DNA from: Mizuhopecten yessoensis
Taxonomy: Eukaryota
Assembly (NCBI RefSeq): GCF_002113885.1
Contig: NW_018408567.1
Location: 1,005,537 to 1,069,536, forward strand
Direction: 5' to 3'
DNA length: 64,000 nucleotides
A program made the position numbers and the translations under genes. Below the pieces are notes generated by a model, which worked only from the letters and a program-made list of their open reading frames with translations, was not told the DNA's origin and did not search any database. This document shows, in pieces, positions 3,771 to 49,800 of the stretch (positions within the stretch are counted from its first letter, which is position 1; the number at the start of each line of letters is the position of its first letter).

Positions 3771-6700
3771 TTAGTCGGCTGCCTCCAAAGCTTTGAGGAA
3801 GTTCGCCTTTCGCTGTTTCACTCGGTCCTCCCTCTGGAGACGACTCATCTTGGATCGGTTCCACCTGCAATTACAGAAGAAAAACATAACCATGATGGTT
3901 AGCAATATCAAGGCACATAGTTAAATCTTAGAAATTAAAAATGAAGAATTTCTAATTCAACAATTGCTTTAGCACTGCCTTCTTCTTGGGGCAACAGACT
4001 TTCATCATGCTTTCTGTAGTTAGCCTTGTTATTTTAACATTACACAACATGGACTTTTTAAATGATATCATAAATACTCAATACCACAAAAACCGCTAGT
4101 ACCGCAGGGACGATTGTTTTATATGCCTGTCCAATGCCATGCGTAAACATTTTCTGCACAATACCTCAAATATGACAAGATACTGATTGAAACTAGATAA
4201 ATTTTCATATTATATGAAGACAAAGGTTAAGTTTAAGTTGAACAAAATATGTGCATGGCATTGTACATTTTTTTCTTACTCAAGACATATATAGGCCAAA
4301 TCCTCAACCTAACTCAAGACCTCCTTTAAATTTATCAGGGCTTTTAACTCATACAGGTTAATTATCTCATCAATGGATTCATAGGAATATTCCTTCTACA
4401 CATGCCAATAATAGAATGGTGACTCACCTCTTCACCTTGCCAGCTGGTTCCTTCTTCTGCTTTGTTGCACGGTCCGGATTGGCTCGGATGGTAGCGTGAC
4501 TCTTCTTGTACATCTCTTCCAGCTATACATGAACAAACAGCAACTTGTGTTTATCTCAGACATATAATCTAACTGGTCCTAACTCATGTACAAAACAATG
4601 CACAGGAATGCTAGACCATGTTCATAATGCATTTCAATTTCATTAAAACTTGATTATATGGGAAAGACGTTTGACATTTTATCGAGTTATCAGAATCACA
4701 TAAATCATATCCCAGAGGTCACAAGTGATCACTTCAACTAGCCACTGAAAAAACATCAGTGATAGACAAGAAATCAAAGATCACTCCAGGTCAAATGACA
4801 CGCATGTTTTCATCATCTATACTCAACATAATTGAAAGCATCAACGAATGGTTTCATATCCACTGCATTTTTACTCTTTTGCTTGCTATTGATTTATATT
4901 TACTTAATGAAAAAGAACACTACAACCACCACTTTCACGGCTCTGATGACAAAGTGAATATCTAACAGAGTTAAGGTAAACGATGCCCAAATACACATCA
5001 CACTTACATTTTCTGAAGTAAGGCCATTCTTGATGAACCTGGAGAACTGCCTCTTGTAGGCATCCTCATCCTCACCCTGTAGATGTGCCATATATCCAGC
5101 TACATGCTTGCCAAAGATATGGTTGCGGTGAACCTCAGCATTGAACTCGTTGCTCTCCCCATCGTATCCAGGGAAACGCTTTGTGCTGTAAAAATATCAA
5201 ATTGAAGCATTCTAAAATCCTTCATTAACCAAAACTTTGCTTGTAACAAGTTTGTAACATCAATTTCATTTTTTTCATGGTTTAACAAGTGACTGTACAG
5301 TATTCTTAGTGTAAAGAGTAATCAGATCATCTTAAATCATATCTGAAGATAGGTAACTGGACAAGAAGAGCAAACAGTGAAAAAACATCACCATTCATCT
5401 CAAGACCAGAACCGACCAACAGTCAAATGACACGCATGTTTTCATCATACTGACTCTTTCTTTTCTTATATCAGAATTTTGTACAAATCGGTTATAGGTA
5501 TTCAAAAGATTTAATTATCTTTTTTTCAAGACATAAATTGGTACTGTACTGAATAAGGACCAGTACCAATACTAGAGAGGATATGCAATTGGGTAAAAAA
5601 TACTTCAGGCTGTTCCAGAAATAAACGTATGGGAGGCCAGGCTGAGGGATATGAAGCACTTTTTCAGAGACCCCACCACCAATCAAATTTTGAAAGTAAT
5701 ACAGCATCAAGAATAGTAGATGGGTCTGATTTTAAAATCCTTCATTTACCAGAATGTTATTAACATCCCTTGCACATTTTGTTTGGTTAAACAAGTGACT
5801 CTACAGTATTCTTAGTGTAAAGAGTAATCAGATCATCTTAAATCATATCTGAAGATAGGTAGCTGGACAAGAAGAGCAAACAGTGAAAAAACATCACCAT
5901 TCATCTCAAGACCAGAACCGACCAACAGTCAAATGACACGCATGTTTTCATCATACTGACTCTTTCTTTTCTTATATCAGACTTTTGTACAAATCGGTTA
6001 TAAGTATTCAAAAGATTTAATTATCATTTTTGACCTGTTGAATGTGGGATAGATTTCAAGACATATTGGTACTGTACTGAATAAGGACCAGTACCAATAC
6101 TAGAGAGGATATGCAATTGGGGGGGAAAAAAACTCAGGCTGTTCCAGAAATAAACGTATGGGAGGCCAGGCTGAGGGAACCACTTTTTCAGAGACCCCAC
6201 CACCAGCCAAATTTTGAAAGTAATTCAGCATCAAGAATAGTAGATGGGTCTGATTTTAAAATCCTTCATTTACCAGAATGTTATTCTCATCACTTGCACA
6301 TTTTGTTTGGTTTAACAAGTGACTGTACAGTATTCTTAGTGTAAAGAGTAATCAGATCATCTTAAATCATATCTGAAGATAGGTAGCTGGACAAGAAGAG
6401 CAAACAATGAAAAAACATCACCATTCATCTCAAGACCAGAACCGACCAACAGTCAAATGACACGCATGTTTTCATCATACTGACTCTTTCTTTTCTTATA
6501 TCAGACTTTTGTACAAATCGGTTGTAAGTATTCAAAAGATTTAATTATCATTTTTGACCTGTTGAATGTGGGATAGATTTCAAGACATATTGGTACTGTA
6601 CTGAATAAGGACCAGTACCAATACTAGAGAGGATATGCAATTGGGGGGGAAAAAAACTCAGGCTGTTCCAGAAATAAACGTATGGGAGGCCAGGCTGAGG

Positions 6701-46800: not shown

Positions 46801-49800
46801 AGTTGGAATCTTGTTATGTTCACTTGGGACTAATCTAGCTTTCCTGAAGACAGTCAAAACCCTACCAGGAAATCTGGTGGCTAAAACGGTGCGAGTTTTT
46901 GTCAATCATGACCCACAAAAAAAAACTTGCACCACTACCAATCCTCATAGTTCTAGCCGTATAAAATCACCATTTCAGAGAAACACACGTTGGCTAAATT
47001 TTAGGTTAATAGCAAATATCAAAGGATCATAAGACATGTCAACTGCATCCAGTTTCTGCCATTCTTTTAACCTGAGCATATTGCTAGTAATGAGTTAAAT
47101 CAAGTCCCAAGTTTTAATCTCTTGAACCCTTTCAATCCTAGGTCACTTTATTTGACTCGACCATACATTTATTTGAACGAGTCCATTATGGTCTGCAGTG
47201 GTGAAAGGAGGGTTAATTTAGGTATGGAATACGAGATTGGGAAAACATATGAAATATATAACAAAAATTCATCCACTTAAAAAAAGAAGAAGAAATTCAT
47301 GAGCAAGCTCTTCATGCCTAGATATCTAATTTTTAGTAACTTAAATTTGCACGATTTGAAAATCCTTAAAAATCATCTACTTTTAGTGCTGCAAAGAAGT
47401 TTTTCCCCCACACACATTCAAATCTCAGACAAAGGTGGTAATCGTGTTATCCCCATTACTGTGTAAGAGTGGTGCACGACGTTTGTCATCACTGATGGAT
47501 ATGGATTCTCTGTACATTAATGGATTTAAGCCAACTAATTCATTCTTGATACTCTAAACCTTAATATTCATCAACTGCTCCCAAACCAATGATATATACC
47601 CATCAACTGCTCCCAAACCAATGATATATACCCATCAACTGCTTCCAAACCAATGATATGAAGCCAACTTTTGTTTAGGAAAGTTGAATTTTGAGGGAAA
47701 CAATACAATGTTCCTACATCACTAATCCCAGAAAGTTAGAAATGGTTTTTGCCACACTGATGCGTCGTACATGACGTTTGTTTGTCATCATTGACTCGCA
47801 TAAATAATTGGAGCTGTTTTATACAGTAGGTCCACTTGACAGGAAATGTCTTTCATTCACCAAGATTATTCTAGTTTTGTTAACAGCTGTTTGGCATCAT
47901 TTTAGTATTATTTATTAATAATGGAGCAGGAAAAGGATAAAAACAGTGAAGTCTCAAGTAGTTCAATCATCGGCTTCAGATTATCTTGCGACAACTTAAA
48001 AATCATCAAGTCCAGCATTTACCATTTGAGAAAAGTATGATTTGCTTTAAAATCTCAGACAAAGGTGGTAATCGTGTCATCCCCAGTATTGTGTAAGAGT
48101 GGTGCACGACGTTTGTCATCATAGACGGATATTCATTCTCTGTACATTATTTGAGTTTGATCACTGTGAACAAGAGGAAAACCAATGCATGCCGACTTCA
48201 ACAAGCAGATCAACTCACTTTTTAAATCTAGTCAATTATTTGTTTAATGCAGATATTATAAACAGTAGTTGAAATCATTATTTATTACATATTTTATATC
48301 CACTGGACAGACGAATTAATTTCTTTATACACAAAACTTGAATATTCGTTAAGTGCTTTCAAACCAACGATATTAAGCCAATTTTTGTTTTGAAAAATTG
48401 ACCTCAACTGAAGAAGCATGCATGTAGTCCAGCATATATCATTTGAGAAAAGCACAAGTGGCTTTAAAATCTCAGACAAAGGTGGTAATCGTGTCATCCC
48501 CATTATTGTGTAAGAGTGGTGCACGACGTTTGTCATCATAGACCGATATTTATTCTCTGTACATAATTTGAGTTTGATCACTGTGAACAAGAGTGAACCA
48601 ATGCATGCCGACTTCAACAAGCAGAATTCACTTTTTAAATCTTTTAAATTATTTGTTTAATGCCGATATTATAACCAGTAGTTGAAATCATTATTCATTA
48701 CATATTTTATATCCACTGGACAGACGAATTAAGTTCTTTATACAAAAAAATTGAATATTTGTTAAGTGCTTTCAAACCAACGATATTAAGCCAATTTTTG
48801 TTTTGAAAAGTTGACCTCAACTTAAAAAGCATGTAGTCCAGCATATATCACTTGAGAAAAGCACAAGTTGCTTTAAAATCTCAGACAAAGGTGGTAATCG
48901 TGTCATCCCCATTATTGTGTAAGAGTGGTGCACGACGTTTGTCATCATAGACCGATATTTATTCTCTGTACATTATTTGAGTTTGATCACTGTGAACAAG
49001 AGGAAAACCAATGCATGCCGACTTCAACAAGCAGGTCAACTCACTTTTTAAATCTTTTAAATTATTTGTTAAACGCAGATATTATAAACAGTAACTGAAA
49101 TCATTATCTATAACAGGTTTTTATACTCATTGGGCTGATGACTTTGTTCTTTCTACAGAAAACCTTTGTAATCATCAGCTACTTTCGCACAAATGATATG
49201 AAACCAACTATTGTTTCGAAAAGTTGAATTTTGAGGGAAACACAATATGATATTCCAATATCAGTGATCCGAGAAAGTAAGTAATGGTTATACCAATCAC
49301 CGAGATGTCGTGCATAATGTTCGCATTGATGGGCATGATAATTTACCTGTTCTTCTACAGTTGGTTCTGTTGACATGAAATACTTTTCATTTACCAAGGG
49401 TATCCCCTTTTTGTCAACAATTGATTTGTATCATTTTTAATAGTGTTATTCATGAATAATGGAGCAGGACATGAAAAGCATGAAGTCGATCAAATACGGG
49501 GATTATACCATTTGAGAAAAGCACGAGTTTGCTTTTAAATCTCAGACAAAGGTGGTAATCGTGTCATCCCCATTATTGTGTAAGAGTGGTGCACGACGTT
49601 TGTCATCATAGATTGATATGGACGAGTGCGAGATACCATATGACTAAAGCCAATAAACACTAGTTGGCAATATGTTCTCTACAGGAATATGACCCGGTTT
49701 ACAACAAGGATGTGGACTCATTGATAAATGTTTTGCAAACTGCTTGTTTCAACTCAAAATAAAATTTTAAATGAAACAAAATTTCTATTATAATTTCTGA

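What the first reader, a model, noticed from the sequence alone, without database searches (positions are those of the whole stretch)
4690..49609. Two neighbouring housekeeping genes each carry a polycistronic-looking tandem array of box C/D snoRNAs inside one intron
Seen: RPL5 intron 5 holds six copies of one ~127-nt C/D snoRNA, and one DDX39 intron holds eight copies of an unrelated 68-nt C/D snoRNA. All copies are in the host's sense orientation, spaced ~400-930 bp apart, with boxes and guides intact. Established: vertebrate intronic snoRNAs are released by splicing, debranching and exonucleolytic trimming, which yields one snoRNA per intron. Polycistronic clusters (plants, yeast, some Drosophila loci) need an extra cleavage step. 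Inference: two independent arrays ~37 kb apart suggest a lineage-wide habit of amplifying snoRNA dosage by intra-intron tandem duplication. They also imply an undescribed route for separating the copies (endonuclease, recursive splicing or NMD-coupled mini-exons). Otherwise trimming would leave long RNAs capped by a snoRNP at each end (sno-lncRNA-like), about 3.1 kb from RPL5 and 3.8 kb from DDX39.
Basis: partly seen in the sequence, partly recalled or inferred. Interest (0 to 1): 0.85.

Follow-up and report, generated by a model that had tools for sequence, protein, structure and literature searches.

The report
Tandem snoRNA arrays inside single introns
In this mollusc-like genome two housekeeping genes each pack six to eight copies of one ribosome-modifying guide RNA gene into a single intron, a layout known from plants and flies but unusual for this class of guide in animals, and how the copies are cut apart is untested.

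Summary
Observation confirmed. One RPL5 intron holds six copies of a 126-127-nt SNORD10/mgU6-77-like C/D snoRNA, with a seventh in the next intron. One DDX39 intron holds eight intact copies of a 68-nt C/D guide for the 18S Gm1328 site, plus two decayed copies. For RPL5, RNA reads show one plain intron (1,580 junction reads, no internal exon or recursive joint). DNA from two other studies shows the repeat at about 4-5x depth, one with a head-to-tail junction, so it is not an assembly artefact. DDX39 was not tested with reads. Cores are invariant or keep their structure while spacers diverge, pointing to several functional copies per intron. Expression of the mature RNAs is untested. The layout is the known 'intronic snoRNA cluster' (plants, algae, Drosophila H/ACA); the twist is a C/D homo-array in an animal, where one per intron is the stated rule. 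An unrelated animal has five U17 copies in the same RPL5 intron. The scan noted similar arrays elsewhere in this genome (TCP1, RPL7A, HSPA14; unchecked). Most likely release: endonucleolytic cuts in unstructured spacers, then trimming; no new route is required. New variant of a known kind.

The parts
8874..9076 (-). RPL5 coding exon 5' of the array intron
   Evidence: translation; RPL5 homologues; RNA joint 5185-8874
5186..8873 (-). RPL5 intron (3688 nt, GT-AG) holding six SNORD10-like copies
   Evidence: 790+790 RNA reads skip exactly this stretch; no internal joints
8334..8459 (-). SNORD10-like copy A, divergent; boxes, guide and long hairpin kept; 3148 nt from the 3' splice site
7400..7526 (-). 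SNORD10-like copy B
6876..7002 (-). SNORD10-like copy C (524-bp unit)
6352..6478 (-). SNORD10-like copy D (524-bp unit)
5828..5954 (-). SNORD10-like copy E
5322..5448 (-). SNORD10-like copy F, 136 nt from the 3' splice site
5008..5185 (-). RPL5 coding exon 3' of the array intron
   Evidence: RNA joints on both sides; translation
4690..4816 (-). SNORD10-like copy G, alone in the next intron (5007..4523), divergent
7749..7839 (.). Very high-copy 91-bp MITE-like element with inverted ends, between copies A and B; not part of the repeat unit
   Evidence: summed DNA depth about 200,000 against about 11; loose ends at 7749 and 7839; three copies in the window
50451..50582 (-). DDX39/UAP56 coding exon 5' of the array intron
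   Evidence: translation; 98% identity to the orthologous exon in L012-L014
45601..50450 (-). DDX39 intron (4850 nt, GT-AG) holding eight intact and two decayed copies
   Evidence: the orthologous gap is about 90-330 nt in L012-L014; not tested with RNA
49542..49609 (-). 68-nt C/D snoRNA copy 1 (18S Gm1328-site guide)
49262..49327 (-). decayed copy psi1 (approximate ends)
   Evidence: 3/500 shuffles reach its score; clear paralogue of psi2
48881..48948 (-). 68-nt copy 2
48472..48539 (-). 68-nt copy 3
48055..48122 (-). 68-nt copy 4 (one loop substitution)
47725..47795 (-). decayed copy psi2 (guide and D box broken)
   Evidence: 0/500 shuffles; nhmmer E 0.01
47425..47492 (-). 68-nt copy 5 (three substitutions, one in C')
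46600..46667 (-). 68-nt copy 6
46192..46259 (-). 68-nt copy 7
45782..45849 (-). 68-nt copy 8, 181 nt from the 3' splice site
45491..45600 (-). DDX39 coding exon 3' of the array intron
   Evidence: translation; 94-100% identity to orthologous exons

Best explanation
These are intronic clusters of ordinary methylation-guide C/D snoRNA genes, amplified by local tandem duplication with birth and death of copies. The RPL5 family is a SNORD10/mgU6-77 homologue (28S site shown on proxy rRNA; U6 C77 by homology). The DDX39 family guides the 18S position equal to human Gm1328. SHOWN: the copies, the single RPL5 intron, constraint on cores, guide-target pairing on proxy rRNA, and short terminal stems. 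INFERRED: several copies per intron assemble snoRNPs independently of branch-point distance, helped by their terminal stems. The unprotected A+T-rich spacers are then cut by a general endonuclease (EndoU/XendoU-like or exosome-associated) rather than at a dedicated hairpin, and exonucleases trim each piece to a monomer, as is thought to happen in plant clusters and must in Drosophila H/ACA clusters. Crossover within the conserved cores probably feeds the duplications. Raised snoRNA dosage is the likely effect.
For: One intron and no internal joints in RNA; the array is present in DNA of two other studies. RPL5 copy A, 3.1 kb from the 3' splice site, keeps boxes, guide and hairpin although only about 75% identical to B-F; 10 of 34 consensus pairs show two-sided changes among A, B, F and G. 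DDX39 cores differ at 0-4 of 68 positions while 100-nt flanks of old pairs differ at 20-35%, and decayed copies show what unconstrained copies look like. Terminal stems of -4 to -10 kcal/mol occur on all copies and vary in concert in the RPL5 family; such stems compensate for distance from the branch point (PMC10234308). Guides form 12-bp and 13-bp duplexes with the fifth nucleotide on the expected C and G. The spacers of the two arrays share no stable hairpin. Precedents: intronic clusters (PMC11028025, PMC3089462, PMC2875012) and XendoU release (PMC10557570).
Against: No RNA evidence for any mature copy: the libraries show no peak even over the single copy G. No endonuclease or cut site was identified. 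In mammals two snoRNAs in one intron give a sno-lncRNA, not monomers (PMC5054931). Vertebrate C/D assembly is described as splicing-coupled, and H/ACA assembly as not (PMC10557570). Gene conversion or crossover in the cores could produce part of the core identity, and RPL5 copies B-F are too young (95-99% over whole units) to show selection one by one.
Confidence: 0.5

Rival explanations
1. One snoRNA per intron molecule. Assembly is stochastic and inefficient, usually only one copy per lariat is loaded, and exonucleases run through the unloaded copies. Extra copies raise the chance of making one monomer, so no endonuclease is needed.
For: Needs only the canonical debranch-and-trim path (PMC10557570). 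The nearest copies sit 136-181 nt from the 3' splice site, away from the ~70-nt optimum (PMC5054931), so assembly may be inefficient. It would still constrain each copy.
Against: Two loaded copies would give long products, so the gain is limited. Selection per copy would be weak, yet old DDX39 cores are identical.
Confidence: 0.17
2. Most copies are passengers. One copy per intron is expressed; the others are recent duplicates or are kept alike by gene conversion between cores.
For: RPL5 units C-E are 97-99% identical including spacers. Flanks switch identity next to the cores, the mark of recombination there. Two copies have decayed.
Against: RPL5 A differs from B-F by about 25% yet keeps boxes, guide and compensated structure, which conversion cannot give. 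0/68 differences against 20% flank divergence has p about 3e-7 under simple neutrality. Conversion tracts would have to be very short.
Confidence: 0.13
3. The product is a stable sno-lncRNA of 3.1 kb (RPL5) or 3.8 kb (DDX39), capped by snoRNPs and possibly acting as a multivalent guide.
For: This is what happens to mammalian introns with two snoRNAs (PMC5054931, PMC11028025). The spacers have no obvious cut signal.
Against: No depth plateau between copies A and F: in run X17 spacer contigs (about 13 summed over 4-5 units) match the depth 5' of copy A (about 3), and X23 shows 0-3. This is weak, because the libraries may be poly(A)-selected. Spacers evolve fast with indels and a MITE insertion, and all guides stay canonical.
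Confidence: 0.12
4. Rare alternative splicing to internal donors, acceptors or non-coding mini-exons (NMD-degraded) makes smaller lariats holding one or a few copies.
For: Donor-like motifs recur once per unit: GTGAGT 93-96 nt upstream of box C in four DDX39 units (mutated in a fifth), and GTAAAT about 78 nt downstream of box D in four RPL5 units. A scan note reports duplicated acceptors beside snoRNA copies in RPS6 (s1-528109, unchecked).
Against: No such joint with 3 or more reads among 1,580 in RPL5. No strong acceptor in the DDX39 intron and no good recursive site (rough matrix with a few off-register training sites). Recurrence is explained by the duplication itself.
Confidence: 0.08

Closest known systems
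SNORD10 / mgU6-77 (Rfam RF01290)
   Same: Box C, then a 13-nt D' guide identical to the Rfam consensus, a long internal hairpin with a conserved UGU-containing apical motif, length about 130-140 nt. Human SNORD10 guides U6 methylation (PMC11863803).
   Different: Scores 24-28 bits against a gathering score of 37. D' is UUGA, not CUGA. The host is RPL5 (vertebrate host EIF4A1, from memory). Seven copies, six in one intron.
18S Gm1328-site guides (plant snoR21/Z221 RF00300; vertebrate SNORD32A and yeast snR40 from memory)
   Same: The D' guide pairs 13 bp with 18S helix 34, fifth nucleotide on the G equal to human G1328 (numbering from my own knowledge). The guide core is shared with the RF00300 consensus.
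   Different: Only 18-25 bits against 44. The D-box guide is unresolved: a near match, with one mismatch, to the conserved 28S GAAAGAUGGUGA region. The host is DDX39, whose vertebrate snoRNAs (U83/U84, from memory) are unrelated.
Drosophila intronic H/ACA snoRNA clusters
   Same: Several snoRNAs in one intron of an animal housekeeping gene (PMC3089462).
   Different: The same source states that Drosophila C/D snoRNAs follow one per intron; here the clusters are C/D.
Plant and Chlamydomonas intronic snoRNA clusters
   Same: Clusters of isoforms in single introns of ribosomal-protein and translation genes; processing is thought to be endonucleolytic plus trimming (PMC2875012, PMC7671301).
   Different: Different kingdom. 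The Arabidopsis examples read hold 2-3 copies, against 6-8 here.
Mammalian sno-lncRNAs (PWS region, SLERT, LNC-SNO49AB)
   Same: Two or more snoRNAs in one intron, in sense orientation (PMC5054931, PMC11028025).
   Different: No long product is shown here. These are constitutive introns of housekeeping genes with canonical rRNA/U6 guides and fast-evolving spacers.

Membership tests
Box C/D snoRNA (both families) | Terminal box C (RUGAUGA) and box D (CUGA), with internal D'/C' | tested here: met
   All 15 intact copies. D' is UUGA (RPL5) or CUUA (DDX39); C' is altered in DDX39 copy 5.
Box C/D snoRNA (both families) | Guide of 10 or more nt complementary to a conserved rRNA site, +5 rule | tested here: met
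   12 bp (2 G-U) to 28S and 13 bp (3 G-U) to 18S on proxy rDNA from other eukaryotes; this species' own rRNA was not available.
Box C/D snoRNA (both families) | Terminal stem / kink-turn ends | tested here: met
   Cofold -4 to -10 kcal/mol on all copies; short for the DDX39 family.
Box C/D snoRNA (both families) | Stable small RNA with these ends, bound to fibrillarin | tested here: inconclusive
   The RNA libraries show no peak even on single copy G; RIP is not testable.
SNORD10 (RF01290) | Rfam gathering score of 37 bits | tested here: not met
   24-28 bits, E 0.007-0.06; the best snoRNA family for all seven copies. Filed as SNORD10-like homologue, not a curated member.
SNORD10 (RF01290) | D' guide identical to the consensus, pairing with 28S | tested here: met
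SNORD10 (RF01290) | The same guide pairs with U6 at C77 | tested here: inconclusive
   No U6 sequence could be fetched. A 10-bp match follows from my memory of U6 and from identity with the human guide; PMC11863803 for human.
snoZ221/snoR21b (RF00300) | Rfam gathering score of 44 bits | tested here: not met
   18-25 bits, E 0.12-8.5; shared target site only, common descent not shown.
Intronic snoRNA cluster | Two or more snoRNA genes in one intron, in sense orientation | tested here: met
   RPL5 by RNA joints; DDX39 by homology only.
Intronic snoRNA cluster | Processing into separate mature snoRNAs | not testable with these tools
   Needs small-RNA sequencing or Northern blot.
sno-lncRNA | Accumulated long RNA between two terminal snoRNAs | tested here: inconclusive
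   No plateau in two RNA runs, but library selection is unknown.
Multi-snoRNA host with non-coding mini-exons (GAS5/SNHG type) or recursive splicing | Spliced exons or recursive sites between copies | tested here: not met
   RPL5: no internal joint, no strong AG|GT site. DDX39 checked by motif only.

The most novel reading that the evidence does not exclude
This mollusc lineage routinely makes methylation-guide C/D snoRNAs from polycistronic introns through a dedicated, undescribed step (a specific endonuclease or assembly uncoupled from the branch point), or accumulates multi-snoRNP long RNAs as functional multivalent guides, so the 'one C/D snoRNA per intron' rule of vertebrates and flies does not hold across animals.
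Probability: 0.2. Interest if true: 0.75.

Novelty: new variant of a known kind. Interest (0 to 1): 0.47.

Why it matters
Animal C/D snoRNAs are taught as one per intron because their assembly is tied to splicing and trimming is exonucleolytic. Arrays of 6-8 constrained C/D copies in constitutive introns show that this rule is not general. They also give a clean test system: copy-specific variants let one small-RNA library show which copies mature, and one Northern separates monomers from sno-lncRNA. How any animal intronic cluster is cut apart did not complete in the papers I could read. The finding also extends a SNORD10-like guide to invertebrates below Rfam's threshold, so standard annotation misses these genes.

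Tried and rejected
Assembly artefact: rejected for RPL5 (collapsed contigs at depth 44-47 against 9-12 in the flanks, and a 6064-to-5533 junction in another study's DNA). For DDX39, units differ by 5-15% with indels, which an assembly loop would not give; not checked with reads. Hidden mini-exons or recursive splicing: not seen. RNase III-like signal: one 10-bp inverted repeat in the RPL5 spacer (z -2.7), none shared by DDX39 spacers; a 6-7-bp hairpin after box D in five DDX39 copies is missing from the other three. Transposon-driven unit: a MITE lies once in each array intron but outside the units; Helentron ends were not searched systematically. Conservation of the arrays in distant animals: none of the two families found in orthologous introns; the two closest relatives' contigs (L009, L015) end before the first copy would start. 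A weak hit in L013 lacks box C and has an altered guide, so it is not counted. Targets for the D-box guides: no consistent perfect duplex. U6 and 28S patterns in viral contigs found nothing. Primary papers on Drosophila, rice and Chlamydomonas clusters were not held; secondary sources are cited instead. Of 79 rDNA-bearing contigs only six were read; none was taken for human and the rest were not examined.
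Full report
OBSERVATION. The window has no N and about 36% G+C. RPL5 (about 11.6 to 3.8 kb) and DDX39/UAP56 (53761 to about 43900) both lie on the - strand. 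A long coiled-coil gene lies between them on the + strand. An unchecked scan note calls the genome the Yesso scallop (s1-509456); I did not confirm the species. Seven copies of one element have C boxes at 8459, 7526, 7002, 6478, 5954, 5448 and 4816, and eight copies of another at 49609 to 45849. C-to-D lengths are 126-127 and 68 nt. Six of the first family lie between RPL5 exons 9076-8874 and 5185-5008, and the seventh lies in the next intron. All of the second lie between DDX39 exons 50582-50451 and 45600-45491. Two decayed DDX39 copies are new.

IS IT ONE INTRON, AND IS IT REAL? Reads were laid on 4400-9100 only (one call allowed). In a raw RNA run the only splice joints were 5185-8874 (1,580 reads) and 4522-5008 (1,315 reads). 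Joints with as few as 3 reads are listed, and none enters the array. In DNA contigs of two other studies the repeat unit collapses to contigs of depth 44 and 47 against 9-12 in unique flanks, and one run holds the head-to-tail junction 6064-to-5533. The tool warns that contig depth is not a copy number, so I read this as consistent with 4-5 units, the number assembled for B-F. The DDX39 array has no read test. Its units differ by 5-15% with indels, and the same intron position exists, only about 90-330 nt long, in three other animals.

WHAT THE RNAs ARE. Rfam finds nothing at gathering score. At relaxed score all seven RPL5 copies match SNORD10, with the 13-nt D' guide identical to the consensus. 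On rDNA of other eukaryotes the best duplex of this guide is 12 bp with two G-U pairs, and the fifth nucleotide falls on the C of the conserved 28S GUGAC motif. Human SNORD10 guides U6 methylation (PMC11863803); the U6 C77 pairing here rests on guide identity and my own knowledge. Two single SNORD10-like genes from an unrelated animal metagenome share boxes and guide. The DDX39 family weakly matches snoZ221/snoR21b. Its D' guide pairs 13 bp with 18S helix 34, with the fifth nucleotide on the G that is human G1328 (numbering from my knowledge). Its D guide has no clean target; the nearest is the conserved 28S GAAAGAUGGUGA region with one mismatch. Neither family reaches Rfam's threshold, so both are filed as 'like', not as members.

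ARE SEVERAL COPIES FUNCTIONAL? RPL5 copy A is about 75% identical to B-F and lies 3148 nt from the 3' splice site. It still keeps both box pairs, the guide, the terminal stem and a long hairpin. Ten of 34 consensus pairs change on both sides among A, B, F and G (four sequences, three lineages, so this is indicative only). At least two lineages in the same intron therefore appear to have been kept by selection. B-F are recent duplicates (95-99% over whole units) and say nothing one by one. In DDX39 six cores are identical and the others differ at 1 and 3 positions, while flanks of old pairs differ at 20-35%; 0/68 at 20% has p about 3e-7. The decayed copies have broken guides and boxes. Flank identity switches next to the cores, which suggests crossover or conversion there and may inflate core identity. 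Expression is not shown. Neither RNA run has a peak on any copy, including the single copy G, so those libraries do not capture snoRNAs.

MECHANISM. Canonical release gives one snoRNA per intron, and two snoRNAs in a mammalian intron give a sno-lncRNA (PMC5054931; PMC11028025). Splicing in smaller steps finds no support in RPL5. Donor-like motifs recur once per unit in both arrays, but so would any motif in a duplicated unit, and the DDX39 ones are untested. A long stable product is not visible: spacer depth per unit equals the depth upstream of copy A, which is weak evidence given unknown library selection. The two arrays share no dedicated hairpin. I therefore favour position-independent assembly, aided by terminal stems (PMC10234308), followed by cuts in the unprotected spacers by a general endonuclease and normal trimming (0.5). 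XendoU is a described animal enzyme for such release (PMC10557570). Rivals are stochastic one-per-lariat maturation (0.17), mostly passenger copies (0.13), sno-lncRNA (0.12) and rare alternative splicing (0.08). All processing steps are inference.

HOW WIDESPREAD. Among six other animal RPL5 loci that span the orthologous intron, one (L005, ENA ERZ25767047, species unknown) has five SNORA73/U17 copies in that same intron and three in the next (128-144 bits), with conserved cores in diverged flanks. It also has three copies of an H/ACA-like element in the intron before. The others have at most one snoRNA-like element there, or satellite DNA. These particular arrays are thus lineage-specific, while the layout recurs. 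Unchecked scan notes list arrays in TCP1, RPL7A, RPS6 and HSPA14 of this genome, which fits a genome-wide habit; I did not test them.

COMPARISON AND NOVELTY. 'Intronic snoRNA cluster' is a named category (PMC11028025). It is known from Arabidopsis, rice and Chlamydomonas (PMC2875012) and from Drosophila, where H/ACA loci are generally clustered but C/D loci follow one per intron (PMC3089462). The layout is therefore known. What differs is the class and size: C/D homo-arrays of 6-8 in an animal. I found no report of this in nine literature searches, but several primary papers were not held, so a blank is weak. Verdict: real, a new variant of a known kind, interest 0.47. The most novel reading not excluded is a dedicated lineage-specific release route or functional multi-snoRNP long RNAs (probability 0.2, interest 0.75).

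LIMITS. Spliced models were searched exon by exon and the joined step was left out. No N stretches were filled. The species' own rRNA and U6 were not available.

Noticed in passing
L005:8489-12748 and 13475-14573 (ENA ERZ25767047): Unidentified animal: five SNORA73/U17 copies in the same RPL5 intron and three in the next (Rfam 128-144 bits); cores about 95% alike in diverged flanks. U17/snR30 is needed for 18S processing (own knowledge), so this may be a good system for testing cluster processing.
   Followed up: partly
L005:6221-7522: Three copies of a ~150-nt H/ACA-like element (H box and 3' ACA visible, no Rfam hit) in one further RPL5 intron.
   Followed up: partly
window 7749-7839; also 29171-29260 and about 47130-47211: 91-bp MITE-like element with inverted ends preceded by TTAA; summed depth suggests on the order of 10^4 copies per genome; one copy sits in each array intron.
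   Followed up: partly
window 49044, 48218, 46352, 45942 (- strand): Donor-like GTGAGT motif 93-96 nt upstream of box C in four DDX39 units (mutated at 48631); not tested with RNA.
   Followed up: partly
window 5537-5569 and repeats at 6065, 6589, 7113: Perfect 10-bp inverted repeat with a 13-nt loop in the RPL5 spacer (z -2.7); absent from the spacers next to copies A and B and from DDX39.
   Followed up: partly
window about 49541-49509 and equivalents: 6-7-bp hairpin just after box D in five of eight DDX39 copies, lengthened by paired changes in copy 1.
   Followed up: partly
window about 14300-35500 (+ strand): Long multi-exon coiled-coil gene between RPL5 and DDX39; only generic coiled-coil Pfam hits. 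It might be CCDC18-like (a neighbour of RPL5 in vertebrates, from memory); not tested.
   Followed up: partly
window 25652-26324, 30522-30996, 33510-34641, 42551-42928: Minisatellites of 38, 25, 26 and 141 bp. The 38-bp and 25-bp units contain CAG|GTA motifs and look like copies of exon-intron junctions of the coiled-coil gene.
   Followed up: no
L001:197-337, L002:7946-8094 (JGI Ga0126335): Single SNORD10-like genes with UUGA D' in an invertebrate-like metagenome host; the L002 host gene is not RPL5.
   Followed up: partly
L003:8445-8510 and 9890-9950; L004 about 6890-6960: A different small C/D-like snoRNA, one per intron, in the orthologous RPL5 intron of other animals: snoRNA content of this intron turns over between lineages.
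   Followed up: no
L014:4569-4702: SNORA57 (above gathering score) in a DDX39 intron of another animal.
   Followed up: no
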